A stretch of 64,000 nucleotides of DNA from Lytechinus pictus. Lineage: Eukaryota. Positions 25,886 through 55,442 of the stretch are shown one piece after another; position 1 is the first letter of the stretch, and each line of letters opens with the position of its first letter. The position numbers and the translations under genes were made by a program. Location of the stretch: NCBI RefSeq assembly GCF_037042905.1, contig NC_087246.1:12214001-12278000 (forward strand), written 5' to 3'. The notes under the pieces were generated by a model that did no database searches, was not told the DNA's origin, and saw only the letters and a list, made by a program, of their open reading frames with translations.

Positions 25886-26369
25886 ATGGCTTCATCTGGA
25901 CATGCTATAGGATTCCTGGTTGCTGTTATCGCCATTGCTGCATTCTACATCATTCCTGACTCTGACCCCAGGATTGTCCAATTACAGTCTCAGGTCAACA
26001 CCCTCACCTCTGAGGTCGTGGGTCTATTTTCTCGTGAAAATGTTGCAAAAGCGACCAGTCCAGAAAACGTTGAGGACTCTGGAAAACTGTTCACTGTGGA
26101 TTCACTGAAGGCATTTGATGGAAGCAAGAATAGCCCTGGACTTCACATAGCCATTATGGGGAAGGTCTTCGATGTCAGCAAGGGGGAGAAACACTATGGC
26201 CCAGGAGGGGGATACAGCTTTTTTGCTGGAAGGGACTGCTCCAAGGCTTATGTGTCTGGAGATTTCACTGAAGAAGGACTGATACCAGATGTAGTGGGGC
26301 TTACCCCTCAATATATGGTTGGCATTGATGATTGGGTCTCATTCTTTGAAAAAGAATACACTTATGTTG
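25886..26369 (+). CDS. CYB5D2: Neuferricin (cytochrome b5 domain-containing protein 2), coding exon 1
   Basis: N-terminal hydrophobic segment; MAPR-type cyt-b5 domain (IAIMGKVFDVSKGEKHYGPGGGYSFFAGRDCSKAYVSGDF); donor GTaaga at 26370 (phase 1). Confidence 0.93.
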
Positions 26370-26622
26370 GTAAGATTAAGATTATTGTGGGATTGTTCTT
26401 ATTTGTTTTTCTTTTTTACTTTGTTATTGATGGTTGTCCAGATTTTGCTATGGTTAAACCTTGATCTGTGTCAATTGTTGATCAAGATACACAAAGTTTA
26501 CCTATCAAAATAATAAATTTATGCTCAATCTTGAAAAAGTGTAAGCTTGTATAATGGTTGTCTGATGTTTTTTAAGTTGTTCAGTTTAAATTTTTACATA
26601 TCAACTTGTTTCTGTCAAACAG

Positions 26623-41843: not shown

Positions 41844-41876
41844 TATAAAAGATTTTAAATTTTCAAATGCTTCAGT
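41844..41876 (+). promoter_or_regulatory. Core promoter (TATA box and Inr) of the micro-exon gene
   Basis: TATAAAA at 41844-41850; TCAGT Inr with its A at 41874, 30 nt after the TATA start; ATG at 41964. Confidence 0.65.
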
Positions 41877-41963
41877 CACGAGCGACGGTGGAAGTTGCAA
41901 CAGAAGTTTCAACAGAACTCGAATTTTCCCTTTTAGTCTTGGTTTTGTTAATCTGGAAAGAAG

Positions 41964-42069
41964 ATGAAGTGCAGTCTTTCTGTCTTGTTTCTTATCGTCT
42001 TCAATGTGAACCAGATCAGTGGTAATGGCTTGTCACAGCCTACAGGTCGTGGAGCTGACGTTGATACCG
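41964..42069 (+). CDS. Micro-exon gene, exon 1 (signal peptide)
   Basis: MKCSLSVLFLIVFNVNQISGNGLSQPTGRGADVDT plus 1 nt, then GTaagt (phase 1). Confidence 0.75.
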
Positions 42070-42548
42070 GTAAGTTTGGTTTCTTATAACTACCTCGGGA
42101 GTATCTAAAACAAGAAGTGATCCTACCTCACAAACGCAGCCACAATCAATAAGTGGCCTGATATGAATAATTAGGATTTTATGGGTCTTAAAAAGCACAT
42201 CCTAAGTTTTAAAATGATATATAGCTTATCAAAATTCATCAACAGTAACCCACACAAGTTATGGATTGAATGCAGAAGAAATTCAGTGGGAGTTTTAAAG
42301 AACATGGAGAAGGTTTAAGTTCCGAGTTTTCTCAAAAATGAAATGGGCACTTTGTGAAATATTAATACAACTCCAAGCAGTCCGCAAGATAGGATGTCAT
42401 CAATTGAACTCTTGTATCGTTTCTTTTTTATTCAACTTTACAATTTTTAGATATCAGCAGAATATAGAATAAATAACGCTTTCAGATGAGCTAATTTTCT
42501 TCTTCTTCTTCTTCTTTTGAAAGACCAGATAACTATTTTGGCTATTTA

Positions 42549-44562
42549 AAGCCAGGGTTACACCAAAACCAAATTCTCTCGAATGAATTCGGACTTATTC
42601 TGCCAGAATATGGCCTGATTCGGATAGATTCGGAACCTATTCGTCTCTGATTCGGGAGCCCCCCACTGATCTGTACACTATCAGATACTATTCAGATCAG
42701 TGGATCTCCCCGAATCGGGAGTATTTTGTTCTCCCTCCCCGAATGCGAGAAAATTCGGGAGGGATTCGGCTCGTTTTGAAATGTTCAAAACCATCCGAAT
42801 ACCCTATAAAATACTCCCGAATGTGGCCACCAGTGGCGTAACTACGGGGAAAGGGAGAAAAAGAGGGAGAAAGGAAGAGAAAAGTATTGGGGAAAGAAGG
42901 AATTATTGTTCATTATCTTGTTATATTATATTATAATGATGTATGTTATATTACATAAACATTTTTTCATAACTTTATGAAACACAATTTGCTCAGGGCC
43001 TATGTCTTCATTGTTCCTGTCGCTCACTTTGTCTGTTCAACGTGATATATAATCCTGTTGTCCTAAAACCTCCCGTTTTCAAGTCAATATACACCAAATA
43101 TATTTCCTCGCACTTCGAGATATTATTGTTTTATGTAGTGACATATGCTTCTTTTCCATGACTACTTAAAATGATTGCCCCATTTTAAGGTTTTAATATC
43201 AAACATTTTCTGTCCGTGCTTACGTTCGCATTAGTGAACTGGTGAAATAATCTGTTCTTCATGAATTCCTAAAATCAGTCCTTGCAATGTCCCTTTTTCC
43301 GATCTGAATATCAAAAAAATTTAACTTGCGCTTCGCGCTCGAATCACTTGATTAGTGAAATACGTATGGTATTAGTAAATTCCTACAAACCAGCCTTATA
43401 ATGCCCCTCTTCAGGTCTGAATTTCCACAATTTGATTAATGAGATGTGTATGTTAATCATGATTACAATGATTGTGTTTAGATGTAATTTTAACAAAATC
43501 AGCAAGCGCTTGGCACTCGCATTACGCGATTGTATTGTGTGTTTAGCAAGACAGGTACGTATCATGATTACAAAAAATTGCTTATAACGTCCCTTTTTTG
43601 GTCTGAATATAAAAAATTTCAGCTCGCACTTCGCACTCGCATTATTTGATCAGTGAGATACATATCTGTTTAATGGCACTGTCCTTAAAATGGAGAATTG
43701 GAGAATTCGTTTTTGGTGTAACCCTATATAGCTTAAAACATCAGTTACATAATAGGAACCGAATCAGATGCAAATCTATTCAAATATAATACCTAATCGG
43801 GTGAATTCGGGAATATTCCGTAACATTCGTGGAGGGATTCGGCTCGTTTTGAAATGTTTTAAACTAGCCGAATACCCTCCAAAACAAGCTTCCAAATGCA
43901 GCCACGACAAACTTTGTTCGGGCAACATTCGGGATGTATTTAGATGGAATTCGGGGTATTCTGGGCAGATCCGGACCTATTCGTATTTTTCGGGGAGTAA
44001 CAGTCTGAATCAAAAAGCCAAATAGACCCGAATATCACGAATATTGTCGAAAATGCCCAGAATGCCCCAAATACCTCCCTGAAACCATACGAATCATTAC
44101 CTGAATGCTGAATACATGGCAGAACACAGGCGAATGAGCCAAACAGACAAGAATATGGCTGAACGGCAGTCGAAAAAGTCGATTTAGTTCCAGTTCGGAC
44201 CATTCTGGTGGCTTTTTTGAGAAATTTGTTGGCAGACTCGCTGCATTAGGCATTTTCGTTCCGATTCGGGTCGTCATTTGGCTGTAATCGGAGCGTTCGG
44301 GCAACATTCGGCTCGGATCTGGTGACATTTGGCTAGATTCTTGCCAGAATTCGGGTTGGCATTCGGCTTTTTTCGGGATGGCCAAACTTGATACGGGTCA
44401 ATTCTTGGCGATTCTGCTACGATTCGGGAACTATTCCGGATCTATTCGTCTCTGATTCGGGGAGCTCCCCGAATCAAAGAATAGGCTTCGAATTCATCCG
44501 AATAAGGACATATTCGCACCGAATTTATTCGGGAGAATTCGGTTTTGGTGTAACCCTGGCTT
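42549..44562. mobile_element. TIR element with a nested hAT-like insert (from about 42831) in intron 1 of the micro-exon gene
   Basis: AAGCCAGGGTTACACCAAAACC / GGTTTTGGTGTAACCCTGGCTT with TA flanks; CAGTGGCGTAACTACGGGG at 42831 followed by GCTCGCA repeats like those in 19328-21757; related fragments at 45690-46640. Confidence 0.65.
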
Positions 44563-45030
44563 TATTATTAAGAAAAAAAATAGGAGCACGGTAAAACAAA
44601 GCTTTTACCGTTTTTACATATTTCATTCCTGAAACAAAATAACGAACGTTTTTCTGTTTTAAATTTCAAAAATAGTATGAATTTTCACTCAATATTCCGT
44701 TTTTGCTATTTCCTTTTCGAATTCAGAAAAACAAATTATCTAACAGTACCTTGATTGAGGAGAAGGAGGAAGAGCTACAAATAAAGGTTTTTTTTTGTTA
44801 TTGCTTTTTTGTGTCACAATAGGTCTAATTTGTCATAAGATAGATATGCACAGTATAATATGCAAAGAAATAAACTGAGGTATTACGTATTGAATACATA
44901 AGTTAATGATCTTATGTTGAGAAACCTATAATATTTACGATAAATTGAATAACATGGAAGGGGTATATAGTAAAGCGTTTACATGTATATATTTAGGGCC
45001 TACTATATTCTTTGATTTCTCCTCCTGTAG

Positions 45031-45066
45031 ATATTGACGTAGAGGAAGCTCTTTTACTAGGAAATC
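45031..45066 (+). CDS. Micro-exon gene, exon 2 (36 nt, DIDVEEALLLGN)
   Basis: ttctcctcctgtAG / GTaagt; phase 1-1. Confidence 0.75.
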
Positions 45067-45642
45067 GTAAGTTGAATTTCATTTTAATCTTTTAATTTGA
45101 TATTTTTATTGAATCAACAAAAATAATAGATGATGAAGAAGAAAAGATGTGAAAGAATACAAATAAAATAAATGAAATGAAAAATAAGATAAAGAAGAAG
45201 AAAACAAGAGATGAATAATTAGAAGAAGAGGATGATGAAGAAGAAAAGGAGAAGGGAGAAAAGATAAAGGAGGAGGAAAGAAAAGCAAAATAATCGAACT
45301 TATGAAAAATATTGGGTGATGCTCTTTATATTATTGTTATTATACTTGTTTATTTCTATAGGGCCTATTTATCTTTGTTATTATATAAAATACATTTGAT
45401 AAAATTGAAGGATATAACATATTTTGTGTTTACAGCTATGTCATAATTCTTGTTCTTTCGATGTTGATCTGGGGCCCATTTCATAATTATAGAGTTACAA
45501 CTGTTGTATCTTTACTACCATGGCAACAGGGCTCAGCAGCCAATCAAAATCAAGGTTTCCATAATAGTTGCCATAATGGCCAGATTACAACAGTTGCAAG
45601 TCCTTTATGAAACGGAGCCCCGGTGTTTTCCTATTTCTATAG

Positions 45643-45675
45643 CTATTGACGTGGAGGAAGCAAAGTTTGGGAGTG
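45643..45675 (+). CDS. Micro-exon gene, exon 3 (33 nt, PIDVEEAKFGS)
   Basis: cctatttctatAG / GTaagt; phase 1-1. Confidence 0.7.
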
Positions 45676-46132
45676 GTAAGTTGAATCAAATCGGGAGGAT
45701 TCGGGATAATTTTGATCTCCCTCCCCGAATAAGAGAAAATTCGCAAGGGATTCAGGAACATTTGTGGAGGGATTTGGCTCGTTTTGAAATATTCAAAACC
45801 CGCCGAATACCCTCCAAAATACTCCTGAATATGCCCACGACAAATTTCTTCCTCGGACACATTCGAGATGTACCTGGATGGAATTCGGTTCGATTCTGGG
45901 AGGCATTGGGCAATTTTTGGGAAGTCAATTCTTGGCAATTGCCAATTGTGCTCCGTTTCGTACCGATTCGCCTCTGATTCGGTCCGAAATTATTCGGGAG
46001 AATTCGTTTTTTGGTGTAACCCTAAAATACCTCCACGAATCCATACGAATCAGCACCTGAATAGAGGGTAGAACACAGGCAAATGAGCCGAACAGACCTA
46101 TTCAAACATGAAGATTCAGACCTATTTGTATA

Positions 46133-46410
46133 TAATAACAATAATAATAGCTGGATTTATAAAGCGCTTTTTCCAGAGGATACAAAGCGCTGCTTTTATT
46201 ACCCCGGCTTTAGCTCGAGCTACCATCACCGGCGCTCAGTGCATGCAAGGAATTAATCCTGCCGGGTACCCATTCACCTCACCTGGGTCGAGTGCAGCAC
46301 AGTGTGGATAATTTTTTTGCGGAAGGAAAAGATGCCATGGCTAGGATTCGAACCCACGACCATCTGTTTGAAAGGCGAGAGTCAGAACCACTAGACCACG
46401 ACGCGCCCAC
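46133..46410 (-). mobile_element. tRNA-derived SINE with L2-like 3' tail
   Basis: A box TGGTCTAGTGG, B box GGTTCGAATCC, central CACTCGACCCAGGTGAGGTGAATGGGTACC, tail AAAAGCGCTTTATAAAT followed by (ATT)n. Confidence 0.75.
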
Positions 46411-47289
46411 CGTATAACGGTCTGAGCTCTACGCGTTAATTTTTGGCCATATTCGTTCCGATTCGGGTCAATACTCGGATCATCATTCAGCTGTAATCGG
46501 AGTAATTGGATAACATTCGGCTCGATTCGGGACACATTTGGTTCGATTCTTGCCATAATGGTATTCGACTTTATTCGGGATGGCCAAAATTGATTCGGGT
46601 CAATTCTTGGCGGTTCTGCGCTGAATCGAATAGGTTCCGAAACGCTTTGATGTCTTGAAAACTAAGAAGTGTTCTTTCATTGGGTTGATAAATATTTGCC
46701 ATTGTTATTCCATGAGAAAGATTCCTGTTCAGAATCTTAAAGTCCATATTGTTACAATCAGGCCCGAATAACAATCGAAACGACAGCTTATTGGCTATTT
46801 AGATAATTACTTTTCTGATTTCTAAACAGAAAAAGGAAATAAGAAGGCGCGTTCAATTTTCTGTTTCGTCAAAGCGAACCCCCCCCCCAAAAAAAAAAAA
46901 AAAACAGAAATACGAAGCGAGAATCTTAATTCAATTTTCTGTTATGTCAAAGCAAAACAAAAATAAAAGTTAAAATATGGAAGAAACAGTAAAACGGAAA
47001 AACGAAGCATTTTACCGTTTTTACATATTTTATTCTTCGTTTTTGCGTTTTCCTTTTCTAAATCAGAAAAACAAATTATCCAACAGTACCTTAATTGAGG
47101 AAGAGGAGGAAGAGCTAAAAAATACGAAGTTTTAATTTGTGTTTTTGTTATTGCTTTTTTCTGTCACAATAACTCTGATCATATTTAGTTGTAAATAATG
47201 TGATTTCACCTAGATTATGACTTTATGATGCCATAACACAAATATATAAGTGTTTACATGTATCAATGTTTATCTTATTTCTCCTGTAG

Positions 47290-47325
47290 ATATTGACGTA
47301 GAGGAAGCTCTTTTACTGGGAAATC
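47290..47325 (+). CDS. Micro-exon gene, exon 4 (36 nt, DIDVEEALLLGN)
   Basis: tttctcctgtAG / GTaagt. Confidence 0.75.
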
Positions 47326-47723
47326 GTAAGTTGAATTTAATTGCAATCTTTTAGTTGGAGATTTTTATTGAATGAACAAAAATGATAGAAGATGAAGAAG
47401 AAAAAGATGTGGAAGAGTGAAAATAAAATGAATGAAATGAAAAATAAGATAAAGAAGAAGAAGATGATGAAGAAGAAAAAAAGAAGGGGGAAAAGTAAAG
47501 AAGGAAGAGAGAGAAACAAATTAATTGAACTTATGAAAATTGAGTGATGCAGCCCTTTCTATTTGTGTTATTATATTTATTTTTTCTTATTTATATATTT
47601 ATCTTCGTAATGTATAAAATACGTTTAATGAAATTGAAAGATATATCATATCTTGTGTTTACAGCTATGACATAATTCTTGTAATTTCAATGTTGATCTG
47701 ATGTTCTTTTTATACCCATCTAG

Positions 47724-47759
47724 CTGTTGACGTAGATGAATCTCTTCTACTAGGAAATC
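47724..47759 (+). CDS. Micro-exon gene, exon 5 (36 nt, PVDVDESLLLGN)
   Basis: cccatctAG / GTaagt. Confidence 0.72.
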
Positions 47760-48100
47760 GTAAGTTGAATTTTATCGCAATCTTTTAATTGGATATTAAA
47801 AAAAATAAAATGAATGAAATGCAAAATAAGATAAAGAAGAAGAAGATGATGAAGAAGAACAAGAGAAGGGAGAAAAAGTAAAGGAGGAGGAAAGAGAAGC
47901 AAATTAATTGAACTTATGAAAATTGAGTGATATTATTCGTAATTGTATTATTATATCTATTTATTCTTTTTTATGTATATAAATCTTTGTTAGTATATAT
48001 GAAACATTTAATAACATTGAAGGATATATCAAATCTTGTGTTTAAAGCTATGACATAATTTTTGTAATTTTGATGTTCTTTTATTTTTATACCCATCTAG

Positions 48101-48136
48101 CTGTTGACGTAGAGGAATCTCTTCTACTTGGAAATC
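48101..48136 (+). CDS. Micro-exon gene, exon 6 (36 nt, PVDVEESLLLGN)
   Basis: cccatctAG / GTaagt. Confidence 0.72.
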
Positions 48137-48471
48137 GTAAGTTGAATTTCATTTTAATCTTTTAATTTGATATTCTGATTTAATGAACACAAATAATAGA
48201 AGATGAAGAAGAAAAAGAAGTGAAAAAAATAAAATGAATGAAATGAAATGAAAAAAAATACGATAAAGAAGAAAACAAGAAATGAAAATTTAGAAGAAAA
48301 AGAAAAGGGAGAAAAAATAAAGGAGGATAGAAAAGCAAATTAATTGAACTTATGAAATTGAGTGATGCTCTTTCTTTTTGTGTTATTATATTTATTTGAT
48401 CTTATTTATATATTTCTCTTCGTAATGTATAAAATACGATCTAGAATTCTTTTATTTCTATACACATTTAG

Positions 48472-48507
48472 CTGTTGACGTAATAGAATCTCTTCTACTA
48501 GGAAATC
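48472..48507 (+). CDS. Micro-exon gene, exon 7 (36 nt, PVDVIESLLLGN)
   Basis: cacatttAG / GTaagt. Confidence 0.7.
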
Positions 48508-48925
48508 GTAAGTTGAATTTCAATTTAATCTTTTAATTTGATATTTTGATTGAATGAACAAAATTGATAGAAGATGAAGACGAAAAGGAAGTGGAAGAAT
48601 AAGAATGAAATGAAAAATAAGATAAAGAAGAAGAAAACAAGAGATTAATAATTAAAAGAAAAAATTATGAAAAGGTAAAAGAGAAGGGAGAAAAAGTAAA
48701 GGAGGAAGAAAGAAAAGCAAATTAATTGAACTTGTGAAAATTGAGTGATGCTCTTTCTAGTTGTGTTATCGTTTCATTCATTTTTATTTATATATTTATC
48801 TTCGTAATATATTAAATACGTTTAATGAAATTGAAAGATATATCATATCTTGTGTTTACAGCTATGACATAATTCTTGTAATTTTGATGTTGATCTGATG
48901 TTCTTTTATTTTTATACCCATCTAG

Positions 48926-48961
48926 CTGTTGACGTAGAGGAATCTCTTCTACTTGGAAATC
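48926..48961 (+). CDS. Micro-exon gene, exon 8 (36 nt, PVDVEESLLLGN)
   Basis: cccatctAG / GTaagt. Confidence 0.72.
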
Positions 48962-49294
48962 GTAAGTTGAATTTCAATTTAATCTTTTAATTTGATATTC
49001 TGATTGAATGAACAACAATAATAGAAGATGAAGAAGAAAAAGAAGTTAAAAAAATATGAATGAACTGAAATGAAAAAAAAATACGATAAAGAAGAAAACA
49101 AGAAATGAAAATTTAGAAGAAAAAGAGAAGGGAGAAAAAATAAAGGAGGATAGAAAAGCAAATTAATTGAACTTATGAAATTGAGTGATGCTCTTTCTTT
49201 TTGTGTTATTATATTTATTTATTCTTATTTATATACTTATCTTCGTAATGTATAAAATACGATCTAGAATTCTTTTATTTCTATACACATTTAG

Positions 49295-49330
49295 CTGTTG
49301 ACGTAGAGGAATCTCTTCTACTAGGAAATC
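49295..49330 (+). CDS. Micro-exon gene, exon 9 (36 nt, PVDVEESLLLGN)
   Basis: cacatttAG / GTaagt. Confidence 0.72.
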
Positions 49331-49677
49331 GTAAGTTGAATTTCAATTTAATCTTTTAATTTGATATTTTGATTGAATGAACAAAAATAATAGAAGATGA
49401 AGACGAAAAGGAAGTGGAAGAATAAGAATGAAATGAAAAATAAGATAAAGAAGAAGAAAAGAGATTAATAATTAAAAGAAAAAATTATGAAAAGGTAAAA
49501 GAGAAGGGAGAAAAAGTAAAGGAGGAAGAAAGAAAAGCAAATTAATTGAACTTGTGAAAATTGAGTGATGCTCTTTCTAGTTGTGTTATTGTTTTTATTC
49601 ATTCTTATTTATAAATTTATCTTCGTAATACATAAAATACGTTTATCTGATGTTCTTTTATTTTCATACCCATCTAG

Positions 49678-49713
49678 CTGTTGACGTAGAGGAATCTCTT
49701 CTACTTGGAAATC
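49678..49713 (+). CDS. Micro-exon gene, exon 10 (36 nt, PVDVEESLLLGN)
   Basis: cccatctAG / GTaatt (weaker donor). Confidence 0.62.
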
Positions 49714-50061
49714 GTAATTGGAATGTCATTTTAATCTTTTAATTTGATATACTGATTGAATGAACCAAAATAATAGAAGATGAAGACGAAAAGGAAGTGG
49801 AAGAATAAAAATGAAATGAAAAATCAGATAAGAAGGAAACAAGAGATGAATGATTACATGTAGAAGAAAAAGATGATACAAAAACTAAAAAAGGGAGAAA
49901 AAGTAAAGGAGGAGGAGAGAAAAGCAAATTAATTGAACTTATGAAAATTGAGTGATGCTCTTTCTATTTGTGTTATCATATTTATTTATTATTATTTATA
50001 TATTTATCTTCGTTATGTATAAAATACGATCTGGTTTTCTTTTATTTCTATACACATTTAG

Positions 50062-50097
50062 CTGTTGACGTAGAGGAATCTCTTCTACTTGGAAATC
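50062..50097 (+). CDS. Micro-exon gene, exon 11 (36 nt, PVDVEESLLLGN)
   Basis: cacatttAG / GTaagc. Confidence 0.7.
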
Positions 50098-50691
50098 GTA
50101 AGCTAAATTTCAGTTTAATCTTTTAATTTGATATTTTGATTGAATGAACAAAAATATTAGAAGATGAAGACGAAAAGGAAGTGGAAGAATAAGAATGAAA
50201 TGAAAAATAAGATAAAGAAGAAGAAAACAAGAGATTAATAATTAAAAGAAAAGGATGATAAAGAAAAAAAAGAGAAGGGAGAAAAAATAAAGGAGGAAGG
50301 AGAACCAAATTAATGGAACATATTAACATAGAACATCTATTATTGTGTTATCAAAATTATAAAAAAATAAGAGGGGAAGGGGGGAGCGCTAGAAGAAGTT
50401 CTAAATGTAATGTAATTAGTTTAGCAATGAATTTAATAACAATGAAGAAGTAAGCTAGTGTGTTTTCAGTTATGTCATTATACATGAACTATCATTTTTA
50501 TTTGGTATTCTTTGTTTTCTACTCTTATATGTAAACTTGTAGTTTCATACCTAGGAAGTTTAAATATCATTATAATCTTTTAACTGAGAAATATGTTACT
50601 GTATACTGCCCTCTCACGTCGGGTACACAAGTACTGACGGGGAAAGTAAATGCATCACCACCTCTTTTTTATATGTTGTTTTTATATCTAG

Positions 50692-50891
50692 AATGATCGG
50701 AGGGACCTTCTTGGTCGATTTGACGTCATACTGCTGTGTAAACTCTCATTACCATAGTTACCACAAGATGGAGTCACACCCAAACCAAATTTAGATATTC
50801 TTCTACAATATCAGCAACATGAAGTAACACAATTAGTTTCTGTAACGTGTATCAGTTTTAAATGAGAGCATACGTGAATGGAAATAATAAA
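50692..50891 (+). other. Micro-exon gene, predicted terminal exon (Q, stop at 50694-50696, 3' UTR, poly(A) signal)
   Basis: Acceptor ttgtttttatatctAG; C|AA TGA in phase 1; AATAAA at 50886-50891. Confidence 0.55.
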
Positions 50892-51705
50892 AAAGACTAG
50901 TATTGCTTATTCGTGGCTTATTAATTTCAACTCTTTATTTGAAATATGAGATTCTTACACTGTAAAAACGTATTCAAAAATTGTTAAGCAACACCGTTTA
51001 AAGCCCCCTCACACCTGACCGAATATAGGCGGACGAAGGGTGACGTACGAATGGGGAAAATGCATACGAATTCAACAAATTCAAATAAAATTTCCGTCAA
51101 ATCATGCGATCAGTAACTATTATGACTATTGTCAAATTTTATTCCCCAGATATTATCGGACAGGTTAAAGTGTGTTTTACCATGGTAATTCGAAAAATTT
51201 ATGTATTGCAATTGGATCCAGCAATGTAGCCATGTAGACTCAAAAGTACCCCTGTCCCTTCAGGGTTGATAATGTAGTCTCATTTTGGTCATCATTACTA
51301 TTTTAACAATATAATGAATAGTGATATTTACTCATTTTATTAAGGTTTATGTTTTGCTGAGTATATTCACGTTTCCATCTATACATATACCTCGAAAGAA
51401 AGAATAAATTATTATAGTTGCAATGTGTTTCATAATGGGAAGTATTTTAATGTCAAAAGAGATGCGACAAAGTCAACCATAATTCTTCTATGATTTTGAC
51501 AATTAAATTTGTTGAGCAGGTCCATAACTATACAAAGACTGTTTGTTCCTTGTAATCGGTATTGTTGTATGTTCGTATGTGTTTGTGTGTTGGGTGTTCT
51601 CTCTGAAAGACCTATGGGTGTGCGAGAGTGTGCGTGGGTGTGTGTGTGCATACCAGGAAGTGTCTATGTAGTTGTCGGACCAAAATGTTGATGAAACACT
51701 CCCAG

Positions 51706-51875
51706 GTGTGTGTGTGTGTATTTGAGTGTATCAATCAGATATGATTATTAACGTCTGGGACCGACCTTTAGCGTCACCATCCGAAAGACGTGACCAGGGC
51801 TCGAACCTCGAACCTCTGCATCAATTTGTAATTTCCCCACAGCTTGGATTACAGGCGTACGCCACAACGCCCAAG
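51706..51875 (-). mobile_element. SINE with 7SL/Alu-domain-like head, copy 2
   Basis: Minus strand reads GGGCGTTGTGGCGTACGCCTGTAATCCAAGCT..., then GGTTCGAGCCC and a (CA)n tail. Confidence 0.6.
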
Positions 51876-53360
51876 TGCGTTAGTGTGTCAGGTGTATTTG
51901 AGAGTGTACGCCTGTGAGGGTGTGCGGGTTCGCGCGCGTGTGTGAAGTGCGTGAAGGGGATGGGAGTGTGTGTATGTGGTTTTTTTTTTGTGTTTTTGAA
52001 GGAGTCACGGCTGTAAATATCATAGATACACATGTTTAATAGCAGTAAACAAAAATCCTATGAAATAAGGATTAACTTAGAGACTGACCATCAAAATGTA
52101 ATTTTGACCGCTTCATTTTAGAAATATATAAATGTGTAGAAAGATTGTAATGAGACCTCATTCGTCACCTGAAAAACTGAAAACAGCCCTAATTCTTCCA
52201 CCAGCTGTAGTTTAAAGAAGTGAAATGAAATTTCTTCACCATTTTGGCAAAGGAAGCCAGTAAATTCCATACCTAAAATCAGTTTTAGATGGTGAATCGT
52301 AATGTATACACGTTTGCCAATCGGCTTTATCAAATGACAAATCTTTAAATTCTGTGAATTGGATTGTCTCGAATAACTGCATTTTGCCTTCCTGTTGCAA
52401 TTAAACGTGTAACGCGAGACGTAAGCATCAATATAGAATAAGTGTGGGTGTAATAGTTGTTTGTCTGGGTGTGATAGAGATTAGAGAAGGGTGTGGCGAC
52501 AAACATTAATAAAAGAGGAAGTAAACCTGTATTATCAGAGGCAATGTAAAATAAGTATGGTTGCATGAGAAGCAAAGAGAAATAGTGGTAAGATGCTTTG
52601 TGCATTTAAAGAAAGTGATCGCGGTGACGAATCACAATTTTATGATATTATTGAAGTTTCAGTATCACACTTTATTTCGAGTAACATTAATTAATAGTTT
52701 AAACTATTTATCAAAGTATATACAAGTATTATACAAAAAATAAAAGAGTACTTTCTTGAGCCATATAAACCAAAACTGAAAGCACATCTATCATGAGATG
52801 CGATTACAGCTCATTAGGATGTTTGGCAAGATCTGTGCTGTACCATGGACCCTACCATGGCTGTACCAATGCCAATATAAAATCCTTATTATGACAGTTG
52901 GTGCATTTAATGCCTCATCCAGCGTTTTTGTCTTTTGCAAAACCATAAGCAACGAAGAGAAGACGTGACGAGAGTCTTTGTTCGGTTTCAAATTTAACAA
53001 AGCTTTGATACACGTGGTATAACTACTGGAGCTTCACCGAGAAGTTCTTTACAGAGTCAGATCAATTTCAACGTTCTCCCCTCTGCTAGGCAGCAATTTC
53101 GTTTCATTTCATTTTAGTGAAGAGAAACCAAGGTCATTTCATTTTAGTTTGGTGAAGGGAAATCTGCAAGACTTTTATCACGACTCCTTAGGGAAACTCG
53201 ACCTTGAATATTGAATTGCATTCTGATTTGCATATGAGTTAATTATTGCTTTGAAACCTACCGATTCTCCAGATTTTCTCCAACTTGAATCTATTACATG
53301 AACGTCAGTGTCATGTCAAACATATCGTAAGACGAAAACAAAATTGTAAATTTTGTAACA

Positions 53361-55442
53361 ATGGATCATCAATTTGCACAACTAGCGCCATTTAAGGCAA
53401 CACTTATGATGTGTTTCGTCGTCAGTTTGGGAATATGTTGCAATATTCTACCAATGAATATTCTTCCAAACAGTGACGTTGTTGTCGGAGTATTGAACTC
53501 AGATGACTTAGCTTATACCATATCGTGTGTTGGGGTGATTCTCCTCGCACTGTTTGGAGACATCATCATGGTTCGGTTCATTCGCGGCAAGACTGCGTAC
53601 CATCAGGCTCAAGAAGTATTTTGGCCAGTGAGTTGCCGCCATTGTGCCAAGGCAGTCGGTTTTCAGATAATGGAAAGGAGTCCTGATAATGTAAATACAT
53701 ATCGGCCATACCAAGACAATAATCTTGAAGAATCACATTCCTGTATCACGCAGAGCCCGGATACTCCTGATGATCATCATCATCCAGCTTGTCCTGGGAT
53801 AGAATCACCAAAAACACATGATAGGAAGACAGTCCTCTTCACTGGGTGCCAAGATATAATGACGGATGAGAACCACGCTATGCCTAAATCAACTGATAGC
53901 CAATCTCTCACTGAAAATATAGGTACCAAGCATTCTATGTTTGAGGACTACAAGAAAGTTCATGATAGAGTATCCCAAGGCCTACAAAACACCCACGATG
54001 GGGATTGTCATTCTGCACCGCTGTTTAAGAGACCTCACAAATCTCTTTTGCAAATTTACACAATACTGACGTTCGTTTCCATTGCTAAAATCATCATAGT
54101 GATTATCGCTGATATCATGTGCATCTTGCAACCACATGAAACATACGGTAGGAAAGTCTCATTCGTTGCTCAGGCGGTTGTAAATGGAACGTGTGGAAGT
54201 ATGCTCGTATTATCACTGATATTTTTGAACTCTTATTACGACGCCATCTTCACCAGAAGCGGGAAATTTTGTTACCCTATTGGATTCATGTTCGCTGGTT
54301 GTATTTGGCTTATTATTTCCCAAATAGGATCTCCTTTCGATTCTTCTGACGATGAGCAGCCAAAGCAACCGTGCAAATTGAACGGAAGTTTCGGACAACT
54401 TGTATTTGATTTTGAAGATACAACGGTCTCCTTTGTAGGAGAATGTGGAATAACCGCAGGTGGCATCTTTTGGCATATGTGGAGCAGTACCTTACCAAAA
54501 GGCGTTTTGAAACTCTCACCAGATGCCACTCCTTCATTTGAATATGTGCCTAAACAGCATTCTCAACCAATTTGGAGGAAGATCTACATCTTTGTATCAA
54601 AGTGGATAAACTATCGAAAACCGTTGCACATCTGCGATTCCATTTCTCAAACTGACATAACATCCTTACAAGTACATACTAATAATAGAAAACGGGATCT
54701 GAATAAATTTATTTTGAAACTGTTCCTGGGACTTTTACTTCTTGTTTTGATCAATACAACTACTGTGCCTTTTCTGCGATGGGATAAAATCACTTCACAA
54801 AAATCCCGTTTCTATTTAATAAGGTGTTGTGAGATCGCGTGCGGCATTCCACTCATAGGCACACTCCATTTCCAATCGTTTGTCACGAACAAAAGGTCAC
54901 AAAGTTTCCCCATGAGAAGAGGAATGTCAGTGCTTAATGGACTGACGAGTAGTGATCGCATCCTGCTCCTTGGGTGTGGCGGTATATTCATTCTTAGCTT
55001 ATTTCGCGTCTTTGGGGCTATCACGTTCTTGATCTTTTCGCAAAATGTATCTAACGACGATCAGATATTAAGCTACTTCATGATCCTATTTGCTGTCTTT
55101 AAGATTTACGTGACTTGGCTCATGACGTCATTCTTGTTCATAGCACAACGTCAATATTTTGATGACATTCAGAAGATTAAGTGGACTTTAATCTGTTCCA
55201 TGTGCACAGGAATGTTTAGCGTCACCGTTTGGGTATTGGGAAACACAAGCATTCATCCATGGGTTGGATTACAATTATTCATCGGAAAGGAAAATGGGTG
55301 GTATTTTGGAAAAATTATGGACCCCCTTGTGAGTTTATATGGTATCCATTCTTCTTTAGTTGCACTTAAGACATTAAAAGAAATATACCATGAGGGAATG
55401 CGTGTTTGCGACAAGAAAGACAGTTTCTACAATTTCGCATAG
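53361..55442 (+). CDS. Divergent otopetrin-like (proton channel family) multi-pass membrane protein, intronless CDS
   Basis: 693-aa ORF with about 12 hydrophobic segments in two halves; SFVGECGITAGGIFWHMW resembles otopetrin TM6 (PxxIEYSLxxxxxLYxMW); PLVSLYGIHSS resembles TM12 PLxIFYRFHS. Confidence 0.72.
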   Translation: MDHQFAQLAPFKATLMMCFVVSLGICCNILPMNILPNSDVVVGVLNSDDLAYTISCVGVILLALFGDIIMVRFIRGKTAYHQAQEVFWPVSCRHCAKAVGFQIMERSPDNVNTYRPYQDNNLEESHSCITQSPDTPDDHHHPACPGIESPKTHDRKTVLFTGCQDIMTDENHAMPKSTDSQSLTENIGTKHSMFEDYKKVHDRVSQGLQNTHDGDCHSAPLFKRPHKSLLQIYTILTFVSIAKIIIVIIADIMCILQPHETYGRKVSFVAQAVVNGTCGSMLVLSLIFLNSYYDAIFTRSGKFCYPIGFMFAGCIWLIISQIGSPFDSSDDEQPKQPCKLNGSFGQLVFDFEDTTVSFVGECGITAGGIFWHMWSSTLPKGVLKLSPDATPSFEYVPKQHSQPIWRKIYIFVSKWINYRKPLHICDSISQTDITSLQVHTNNRKRDLNKFILKLFLGLLLLVLINTTTVPFLRWDKITSQKSRFYLIRCCEIACGIPLIGTLHFQSFVTNKRSQSFPMRRGMSVLNGLTSSDRILLLGCGGIFILSLFRVFGAITFLIFSQNVSNDDQILSYFMILFAVFKIYVTWLMTSFLFIAQRQYFDDIQKIKWTLICSMCTGMFSVTVWVLGNTSIHPWVGLQLFIGKENGWYFGKIMDPLVSLYGIHSSLVALKTLKEIYHEGMRVCDKKDSFYNFA

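What the first reader, a model, noticed from the sequence alone, without database searches (positions are those of the whole stretch)
41844..50891. Hidden micro-exon gene: ten frame-symmetric 33-36 nt exons predict an acidic secreted repeat protein
Seen: the apparent 370-450 bp GA-rich satellite is an amplified intron plus micro-exon unit. Each unit holds a conserved 36-nt block (one is 33 nt) between a pyrimidine-rich AG and GTAAGT (GTAATT and GTAAGC once each). In nine of ten blocks only the phase-1 frame is open. Many differences between copies are synonymous (CTA/CTG/CTT/TTA) or conservative, while the spacers carry many indels. Upstream lie a TATA box and Inr and a phase-1 exon encoding a signal peptide. 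Downstream is an acceptor giving Q-stop, then AATAAA. Predicted 155 aa: MKCSLSVLFLIVFNVNQISG-NGLSQPTGRGADVDT-DIDVEEALLLGN-PIDVEEAKFGS-DIDVEEALLLGN-PVDVDESLLLGN-PVDVEESLLLGN-PVDVIESLLLGN-(PVDVEESLLLGN)x4-Q. Established: schistosome micro-exon genes (MEGs) use a signal exon plus symmetric exons of 36 nt or less to vary secreted proteins. Inference: this is an analogous system in a probable echinoderm, where skipping any subset of exons keeps the frame and changes repeat number. The acidic, Cys-free mature chain would suit a Ca-binding biomineral matrix, adhesive or mucus protein. I do not recognise the family.
Basis: partly seen in the sequence, partly recalled or inferred. Interest (0 to 1): 0.95.

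Follow-up and report, generated by a model that had tools for sequence, protein, structure and literature searches.

The report
Expressed micro-exon repeat gene, sea urchin
What looks like a GA-rich satellite is a real, transcribed gene in which ten tiny 33-36-base exons each add one 12-residue acidic repeat to a small secreted protein, a layout best known from blood-fluke "micro-exon genes" but here evolved independently and still expanding.

Summary
Ten blocks of 36 nt (one of 33 nt) lie at the stated coordinates, each between a pyrimidine tract plus AG and a GT donor.

Transcript contigs from two studies (runs X1 and X4) carry GT..AG junctions at the predicted borders: exon 1>2, 2>3, 3>4, 4>5 and last micro-exon>terminal exon. 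Intron depth in X1 is about zero. All five small runs that hold exon 1 also hold the 3'UTR. Two deep RNA-seq runs of a third study show no reads on the exons, so expression is restricted.

A tandem paralogue 36.5 kb downstream has an identical exon 1, five in-frame micro-exons and the same Q-stop exon. Exons carry almost no indels and can be 36/36 identical where their introns are only 70-82% alike.

Not supported or untested:
- exon-skipping diversity, because four exons are identical and the contigs cannot count them;
- a biomineral or adhesive role;
- any relation to schistosome MEGs beyond architecture.

No homologue was found for the exon-1 peptide. The spliced protein could not be searched, because it has no reference. 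The scan holds no other report of this gene.

The parts
41844..41851 (+). TATA box (TATAAAAG)
   Evidence: Read directly. It lies 30 nt upstream of the A of the Inr-like TCAGTC. The TATA-to-ATG stretch is 98% identical in the paralogue, against 86% further upstream.
41874..42069 (+). Exon 1: 5'UTR (about 41874-41963) plus coding part 41964-42069 (35 codons + 1 nt, phase 1). It encodes the signal peptide (residues 1-20) and 15 further residues.
   Evidence: The X1 contig carries 186 letters upstream of exon 2 that end in the last bases of exon 1, so its 5' end is at about 41884. Runs X1-X5 hold 0.55-0.77 of the words of 41880-42120, and 0.76 is expected if only the exon part is present. The coding part is 100% identical in the paralogue. 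Hydrophobic core: mean Kyte-Doolittle 2.8 over residues 3-13. The cleavage site ISG|N is inferred from the -3/-1 rule; no SignalP run was possible.
42070..45030 (+). Intron 1 (2961 nt, GTAAGT...AG), loaded with interspersed repeats
   Evidence: The exon 1>2 joint is seen as a loose end at 45030 in X1.
45031..45066 (+). Micro-exon 2 (36 nt, DIDVEEALLLGN)
   Evidence: Joint 45066>45643 with GT..AG ends in X1 and X4. Orthologous to paralogue unit B2, support 99/97.
45643..45675 (+). Micro-exon 3 (33 nt, PIDVEEAKFGS)
   Evidence: Joints 45066>45643 and 45675>47290.
47290..47325 (+). Micro-exon 4 (36 nt, DIDVEEALLLGN)
   Evidence: Joints 45675>47290 and 47325>47724 in X4.
47724..47759 (+). Micro-exon 5 (36 nt, PVDVDESLLLGN)
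   Evidence: Joint 47325>47724 in X4.
48101..48136 (+). Micro-exon 6 (36 nt, PVDVEESLLLGN). Identical in sequence to exons 8, 10 and 11.
   Evidence: Its unit is 96-97% identical to unit 8.
48472..48507 (+). Micro-exon 7 (36 nt, PVDVIESLLLGN)
   Evidence: Its unit pairs with unit 9: intron 93% identical, tree support 95/98.
48926..48961 (+). Micro-exon 8 (36 nt, PVDVEESLLLGN)
49295..49330 (+). Micro-exon 9 (36 nt, PVDVEESLLLGN, CTA codon)
   Evidence: A joint leaves 49330 for an exon of the exon 6/8/10/11 sequence in X1 and X4.
49678..49713 (+). Micro-exon 10 (36 nt, PVDVEESLLLGN, donor GTAATT)
50062..50097 (+). Micro-exon 11 (36 nt, PVDVEESLLLGN, donor GTAAGC)
   Evidence: The joint into 50692 comes from an exon of this sequence.
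50692..51086 (+). Terminal exon: completes the Gln codon, stop TGA at 50694-50696, then 3'UTR. AATAAA at 50886-50891 and again at 51084-51089; the transcript reaches at least about 51086.
   Evidence: An acceptor joint at 50692 with GT..AG ends is present in X1 and X4. The X1 contig of 425 nt runs 136 nt beyond 50950, and an X4 contig covers 50790-50945. X5 holds 0.97 and X4 0.87 of the words of 50692-51090. 50692-50891 is 95.6% identical to the paralogue, against 78-83% for the flanks.

Best explanation
This is a real, transcribed, protein-coding gene with a tandem paralogue. About 76% of its coding sequence (357 of 468 nt) sits in ten phase-1/phase-1 micro-exons.

Shown:
- A TATA-driven transcript starts near 41874-41884.
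- It is spliced exon 1>2>3>4>5, on through the repeat exons, and into a terminal exon that adds Gln and a stop.

Inferred:
- With all exons included, the product is a 155-aa precursor. Its 20-residue signal peptide is removed to give a secreted, Cys-free, acidic chain of about 14 kDa (pI about 4). That chain is one 15-residue head plus ten 11-12-residue repeats of the type P/D-V/I-D-V-E-E-S/A-L-L-L-G-N.
- Each repeat equals one exon. Every exon is a multiple of 3 in the same phase, so unequal crossing-over between the 370-450-bp intron+exon units changes repeat number without breaking the frame.
- That growth has happened recently. A two-unit block (units 6-7) was copied to units 8-9 at 93-97% identity. 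The older paralogue pair differs in number, ten units against five.
- Near-perfect GTAAGT donors, strong pyrimidine tracts and an invariant purine-rich core (GACGTAGAGGAA) probably serve to get such short exons recognised.
- Constitutive inclusion is my default reading.

The biological role is unknown. My best guess, with low confidence, is a tissue- or stage-restricted secreted structural or self-associating repeat protein, rather than a classical disordered mineral-binding polyanion.
For: Structure:
- Exon coordinates and splice signals are, and the exact 155-aa ORF.

Transcripts:
- GT..AG joints 45066>45643 (X1, X4), 45675>47290 and 47325>47724 (X4, one contig at depth 7.55 through exons 2-5).
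- A joint into 50692 (X1 depth 185, X4 depth 10).
- The X1 loose end before 45030 spells the end of exon 1.
- X1 depth is zero in pure-intron bins and 57-266 in exon bins.

Breadth of expression:
- The same five runs from two studies hold exon 1 and the 3'UTR.

No processed DNA copy:
- The genome holds only two copies of exon 1, and both are followed by the intron.

Paralogue:
- It has an identical exon-1 coding part, five micro-exons all open in the same phase, and the same Q-stop acceptor.
- AG and GT are kept in 15 of 15 units.

Constraint:
- Exons have 0-1.7% gapped columns against 5-31% in introns.
- Exons are 36/36 identical where introns are 70-82% identical.
- pN/pS is 0.51.

History:
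- In the unit tree, A2/B2 are orthologous, and A6/A8 and A7/A9 are recent duplicates.
Against: - No run holding the transcript is recorded as RNA. That X1-X5 are cDNA is inferred from the junctions and the lack of intron depth.
- Two deep rRNA-depleted RNA-seq runs (X6, X7; about 6% of each was read) show no reads on any exon.
- Translation, secretion and signal cleavage are not shown.
- The number of repeat exons in the mature mRNA cannot be read from k=31 contigs, because exons 6, 8, 10 and 11 are identical.
- pN/pS of 0.51 on tiny exons is weak evidence of protein-level selection. Part of the exon conservation could reflect splicing-enhancer constraint or gene conversion.
- No homologue was found in any other organism, so cross-species conservation of the ORF is untested.
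Confidence: 0.8

Rival explanations
1. The array is a combinatorial isoform generator like schistosome MEGs. Regulated skipping of any subset of the symmetric micro-exons yields a ladder of secreted variants that differ in repeat number and order.
For: Every micro-exon is a multiple of 3 in phase 1, so any skip keeps the frame. Two exons have weaker donors, GTAATT and GTAAGC. In the paralogue two donors are poor, GTATGA and GTCAGT. Contigs drop rare variants, so skipping is not excluded.
Against: No junction among the distinguishable exons 1-5 skips an exon. The apparent skips 48136>50692 and 49330>50062 join identical exon sequences, so they are ambiguous. Symmetric phase is also the simple by-product of amplifying one exon. 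Strong consensus donors argue for constitutive use.
Confidence: 0.2
2. The product is a polyprotein precursor cut into free 11-12-residue acidic peptides, one per exon. Cutting would occur for example after the Asn that ends each repeat.
For: The repeats are uniform in length, each ends in Gly-Asn, and the next begins with Pro or Asp. Other secreted peptide families exist in this genome, according to other agents' notes (unchecked).
Against: The repeats contain no mono- or dibasic convertase sites, and the mature chain has only one Lys and one Arg. There is no Gly-basic amidation signal. No peptide data exist.
Confidence: 0.1
3. It is a spliced non-coding RNA, or a transcript whose ORF is not translated. 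The exon conservation would reflect only splicing signals and recent duplication.
For: pN/pS of 0.51 is not far below 1. The invariant exon cores look like purine-rich splicing enhancers. No homologous protein was found.
Against: The ORF runs from the first AUG of the transcript, which has A at -3, through 12 exons. A canonical signal peptide is present. All 15 diverged micro-exons in the two genes stay open in one frame, without a single indel. Both genes keep the same stop two codons into the last exon.
Confidence: 0.07
4. It is a plain GA-rich satellite with chance splice-like motifs and is not a gene.
For: Tandem Repeats Finder reports 371/384-bp arrays.
Against: Spliced transcripts with the exact predicted borders are present in two studies. 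A promoter, a signal exon and a terminal exon are conserved at 96-100% in the paralogue, against 78-86% for the flanks.
Confidence: 0.02

Closest known systems
Schistosome micro-exon genes (MEGs; described in the papers read, e.g. bioRxiv 10.1101/2023.06.21.545858)
   Same: A longer 5' exon carries the signal peptide and a longer 3' exon ends the gene. Between them are 10 or more very short symmetric exons (here 33-36 nt; 6-81 nt in MEGs) separated by introns of 0.3-3 kb. The products are small secreted proteins without homologues elsewhere. Family growth is by tandem duplication, and automatic annotation is hard.
   Different: There is no sequence similarity. MEGs are reported as specific to Schistosomatidae or parasitic flatworms. 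MEG exons within a gene are mostly different from each other and typically 15 nt or so; here they are copies of one another, one peptide repeat each. [quoted passage not shown] All exons here are phase 1-1.
Phosphodontin, sea-urchin tooth matrix phosphoprotein (PMC2830187)
   Same: It is an echinoid-specific secreted protein with a signal peptide followed by many 11-12-residue acidic repeats and a pI of about 3.9. The protein here has a pI of about 4.05.
   Different: The phosphodontin repeat is EISSGEGEQPK: Ser-rich, phosphorylated, hydrophilic and Lys-terminated. Here the repeat is Leu/Val-rich, with one Ser not in an S-x-E context and no Lys. Phosphodontin also has an Asp-rich C-terminus, which is absent here. 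In this genome the phosphodontin-like repeats lie in one continuous 286-codon open frame, not in micro-exons.
Exon-per-repeat structural genes: fibrillar collagens (54-bp exons), spider flagelliform silk (iterated exon-intron modules), casein/SCPP genes (24-30-nt symmetric exons). From my own knowledge; not tested here.
   Same: Repeat proteins whose repeat unit coincides with a short symmetric exon. The intron+exon module is amplified and homogenised as a unit. Caseins are secreted, acidic and show exon skipping.
   Different: These have different phases (0 in collagens and SCPPs), different repeat chemistries, no homology, and much longer proteins (collagen, silk). None is known from echinoderms in this form.

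Membership tests
Schistosome MEG family | Most of the coding sequence lies in symmetric micro-exons (multiples of 3, at most about 36-81 nt) flanked by longer first and last exons | tested here: met
   357 of 468 coding nt lie in ten exons of 33 or 36 nt, all phase 1-1.
Schistosome MEG family | N-terminal signal peptide, secreted product | tested here: inconclusive
   Residues 1-20 have Lys2, an 11-residue hydrophobic core (mean Kyte-Doolittle 2.8) and I-S-G at -3..-1. No SignalP run was possible and there are no secretion data.
Schistosome MEG family | [quoted passage not shown] | tested here: inconclusive
   Only consecutive junctions are seen among the distinguishable exons. The apparent skips join identical exons. 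The contigs cannot show rare isoforms.
Schistosome MEG family | Sequence relationship to a MEG family / flatworm lineage | tested here: not met
   phmmer of the exon-1 peptide against 1.84 billion representatives gave only two spurious repeat hits. The genome is that of a sea urchin according to other agents' notes. The full spliced protein could not be searched.
Phosphodontin-type echinoid acidic repeat matrix proteins | Signal peptide plus tandem 11-12-residue acidic repeats, pI about 4 | tested here: met
   Ten repeats of 11-12 residues, mature pI 4.05, 33 Asp+Glu against 2 Lys+Arg. Compare.
Phosphodontin-type echinoid acidic repeat matrix proteins | Ser-Ser-Gly-Glu phosphorylated motif and Asp-rich C-terminus | tested here: not met
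   There is one Ser per repeat, followed by Leu-Leu-Leu. The chain ends in Gly-Asn-Gln.
Phosphodontin-type echinoid acidic repeat matrix proteins | Presence in mineralised tissue matrix | not testable with these tools
   The tissue of runs X1-X5 is not given. Trypsin-based proteomes would miss a chain with only one Lys and one Arg.
SCPP / casein-type genes | All-phase-0 short exons and S-x-E phosphorylation clusters | tested here: not met
   The exons are phase 1 and no S-x-E motif is present.

The most novel reading that the evidence does not exclude
A free-living deuterostome has independently evolved a true MEG-like system: a young, still-expanding pair of orphan genes whose identical symmetric micro-exons are variably included, so that one locus secretes a ladder of repeat-number variants. 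This would be a second, convergent origin of micro-exon-based protein diversification outside parasitic flatworms.
Probability: 0.18. Interest if true: 0.8.

Novelty: new variant of a known kind. Interest (0 to 1): 0.6.

Why it matters
Genes built almost wholly of micro-exons are treated in the literature as a peculiarity of schistosomes and their relatives. An expressed gene pair with the same architecture in a sea urchin, of independent origin, shows three things:
- The layout can arise simply by amplifying one intron+exon cassette.
- It can persist under selection.
- Gene finders probably miss it, since nothing like its N-terminus is present among 1.84 billion representative proteins.

It is also a clean natural example of repeat-number evolution by unequal crossing-over at the exon level. 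Old (ten against five units) and very recent (96-97% identical) steps are both visible.

A practical point follows from the sequence. The mature chain has only one Lys and one Arg, so standard tryptic proteomics of echinoid secretions or skeletons would not have seen it.

Tried and rejected
- **Word-indexed protein search:** It found no candidate. Its length filter (25-79 aa) would in any case exclude the 96- and 155-aa products.
- **Exhaustive phmmer of the 35-aa exon-1 peptide:** the two hits are translated tandem repeats with scores inflated by multiple stretches, not relatives.
- **Spliced 155-aa or 96-aa protein:** it has no reference and may not be typed, so I ran no search, Pfam scan, structure prediction or Atlas look-up on it.
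- **Public annotation of the locus:** I tried to reach it through the neighbouring 693-aa ORF.
- **Literature:** the repeat peptides occur in no paper. Searches for micro-exon genes outside flatworms, or in sea urchins, gave nothing relevant.
- **Further family members in this genome:** there are only the two tandem genes. Other hits to the unit are GA-rich low-complexity matches.
- **Is the X1 3'UTR contig from the paralogue?** No. It shares only 2 of its 6 differences with gene B and lacks B's diagnostic changes, so it is another allele of gene A.
- **Helical hydrophobic-moment analysis:** uninformative on a perfect 12-residue repeat.
- **Organism:** not identifiable with the tools, because runs and names are coded.

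Full report
**What is in the sequence**

Between 45031 and 50097 lie ten short blocks, nine of 36 nt and one of 33 nt. Each is preceded by a pyrimidine-rich tract plus AG and followed by a GT donor: GTAAGT eight times, GTAATT once and GTAAGC once. Tandem Repeats Finder sees the last six units as 371/384-bp arrays.

On the + strand only the frame that corresponds to intron phase 1 is open in all ten blocks. In nine of them it is the only open frame.

Upstream features:
- a TATA box at 41844-41851;
- an Inr-like TCAGTC whose A is at 41874;
- an ATG at 41964 with A at -3;
- an exon that ends at 42069 one base into a codon.

Downstream, an acceptor at 50692 completes a Gln codon and is followed at once by TGA (50694-50696). 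Its parts are:
- a 20-residue signal-like N-terminus;
- 15 unique residues;
- ten repeats of 11-12 residues of the type P/D-V/I-D-V-E-E-S/A-L-L-L-G-N;
- a final Gln.

The mature chain would be about 14 kDa with pI about 4.05. It has 33 acidic and 2 basic residues and no Cys. It is also 37% Leu+Val+Ile.

**Is it transcribed and spliced as predicted?**

Yes. Five small public runs from two studies (X1-X3 and X4-X5) hold exon 1. Three of them hold 0.77 of the sampled words of 41880-42120, and 0.76 is the value expected if the exon part is present and the intron part absent. The same five runs hold the terminal exon and 3'UTR.

I laid contigs of X1 and X4 on 45000-50950. They show joints with GT..AG ends at the predicted borders:
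- 45066>45643 in both runs;
- 45675>47290 and 47325>47724 in X4, apparently on one contig through exons 2-5;
- a joint from a repeat exon into 50692 in both runs;
- a joint from 49330 into a repeat exon in both runs.

An X1 contig that enters exon 2 carries 186 further letters ending in the last bases of exon 1. This confirms the exon 1>2 joint and puts the contig's 5' end at about 41884, ten bases from the predicted start.

In X1 the bins that contain only intron have zero depth, while exon-bearing bins have 57-266. The genome holds just two copies of exon 1, both followed by the intron, so the joined form is not a processed DNA copy. None of these runs is recorded as RNA. That they are cDNA is my inference from these facts.

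Two deep rRNA-depleted RNA-seq runs from a third study, of which about 6% of reads were sampled, have no reads on any exon. Expression is therefore restricted to some tissue or stage that I cannot name.

Contigs continue to at least about 51086, where a second AATAAA lies.

**What the reads cannot say**

Exons 6, 8, 10 and 11 are identical, and exon 9 differs from them by one base. The joints reported as 48136>50692 and 49330>50062 can therefore equally be the consecutive joints 50097>50692 and 49330>49678. k=31 contigs break at these repeats.

So neither the number of repeat exons in the mRNA nor any exon skipping can be read from this evidence. Among the distinguishable exons 1-5 every observed joint is consecutive.

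**Comparative evidence within the genome**

A second gene lies 36.5 kb downstream on the same strand. Its features are:
- an exon-1 coding part 100% identical to gene A;
- a TATA-to-ATG stretch 98% identical, against 86% further upstream, with no similarity beyond about 41616;
- five 36-nt micro-exons, all open in the same phase, although they differ from gene A's by several substitutions;
- the same acceptor giving Gln-stop.

Its product would be 96 aa. The first 200 nt of the terminal exon are 95.6% identical, against 78-83% for the flanks.

Over all 15 units from both genes:
- AG and GT are kept 15 times out of 15.
- Exons have about 1% gapped columns, against 5-31% in introns.
- Exon identity is 85%, against 53-82% for intron segments.
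- Exons 6, 10 and 11 are 36/36 identical although their downstream introns are only 70-82% identical.
- pN/pS among the fourteen 36-nt exons is 0.51, a moderate signal only.

The invariant exon stretches (TTGACGTA..., GGAAATC) may serve splicing as well as coding.

A tree of the units pairs A2 with B2 (support 99/97), so a multi-exon array predates the gene duplication. It also pairs A6 with A8 and A7 with A9. Together with 96-97% and 93% unit identities, this shows a recent duplication of a two-unit block inside gene A.

The gene duplication itself is part of a segmental tandem duplication of about 36.6 kb. That duplication also copied the neighbouring 693-codon ORF.

**How it most likely works**

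Shown: promoter-proximal start, the splicing pattern, the frame, and the paralogue.

Inferred:
- The transcript is translated from its first AUG and the signal peptide is cleaved after ISG.
- A small acidic repeat protein is secreted.
- Each repeat is one exon, and all exons share phase 1 and a length divisible by 3. Unequal crossing-over between the 370-450-bp intron+exon units therefore adds or removes repeats without damage.
- Near-consensus donors, strong pyrimidine tracts and a purine-rich exon core probably compensate for the very short exon length.

Function is unknown. I favour, weakly, a self-associating structural or secretory-product protein.

**Comparison with known systems**

The architecture matches schistosome micro-exon genes in most formal respects:
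- a signal peptide in a longer first exon;
- a run of symmetric micro-exons;
- a longer last exon;
- a small secreted orphan product;
- tandem duplication.

There is no sequence relation. MEGs are described as restricted to Schistosomatidae or neodermatan flatworms. Their exons are not copies of one another, and their hallmark, isoform diversity by exon skipping, is unproven here. So this gene works like, but is not a member of, that family.

The nearest thing in the same animals is phosphodontin: a signal peptide plus 35 acidic 11-12-residue repeats, pI 3.9 (PMC2830187). Its repeat chemistry is different. In this genome its homologue is one continuous 286-codon frame, not micro-exons.

Exon-per-repeat genes such as collagens, flagelliform silk and caseins are architectural precedents. 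I cite them from general knowledge.

**Searches for relatives**

- The exon-1 peptide finds nothing real among 1.84 billion representative proteins or in the word-indexed collection.
- It does not even find itself, which suggests the gene is not in public protein sets.
- The repeat peptides occur in no paper searched.
- The spliced protein has no reference and could not be submitted to any protein tool. This is the main gap in the analysis.
- One run of another organism holds 8% of the 3'UTR words. That hints at an orthologue in a related species.

**Verdict**

- Observation: confirmed.
- Gene model: confirmed by transcripts and by a paralogue.
- MEG-like variation and the proposed function: not shown.

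This is a new, convergent variant of a known kind of gene architecture in a deuterostome, apparently unannotated and still evolving by exon amplification. Other agents' notes in this scan name the genome as the sea urchin Lytechinus pictus. I did not test that.

Noticed in passing
window 53361-55442 (+); copies at G000:C2:12303990-12306062 and G000:C18:19.99-20.19 Mb: An intact intronless 693-codon ORF with no Pfam family sits between the two micro-exon genes. It has a 97% identical intact copy 36.6 kb downstream, so it belongs to the same segmental duplication. A tandem cluster of at least 12 copies at about 55% identity lies on contig C18, and ten of the twelve near-full-length copies carry exactly one in-frame TGA. 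That could mean an intron or a recoded stop.
   Followed up: partly
window 46130-46420 (intron 3 of the gene): An interspersed repeat with very high word depth in all four runs: up to about 850 reads deep in the RNA-seq runs, mostly in one orientation, with many variant bases and many reads running off into unrelated sequence. This looks like a high-copy, transcribed SINE-like family. ARAGORN finds no tRNA in it.
   Followed up: no
window 45514-45592 (intron 2): RNA reads and contigs show 'opposite strands' joints between 45514 and 45585-45592. This indicates a short inverted-repeat (hairpin/MITE-like) element that is transcribed somewhere in the genome.
   Followed up: no
window 42560-42830, 43760-44560, 45690-46020, 46440-46640: Introns 1 and 3 are filled with copies of an element rich in the words GAATTCGG and CCGAATA, in both orientations. 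It is probably a MITE-like family and accounts for the unusual length of these two introns.
   Followed up: no
window 51706-51882: A stretch of about 177 bp that is 95% identical to a stretch at the matching position downstream of the paralogue.
   Followed up: no
G000:C3:5271963-5272625 (L017-L019): Phosphodontin-like acidic 11-residue repeats (56-76% identical to the S. purpuratus peptides in PMC2830187) lie in a single 286-codon open frame. This is probably the orthologue of the tooth matrix phosphoprotein.
   Followed up: partly
window 25886-26464 (+): An open frame with a cytochrome b5-like haem-binding domain (Pfam PF00173, E 4.6e-07). It is probably an exon of a neighbouring gene.
   Followed up: no
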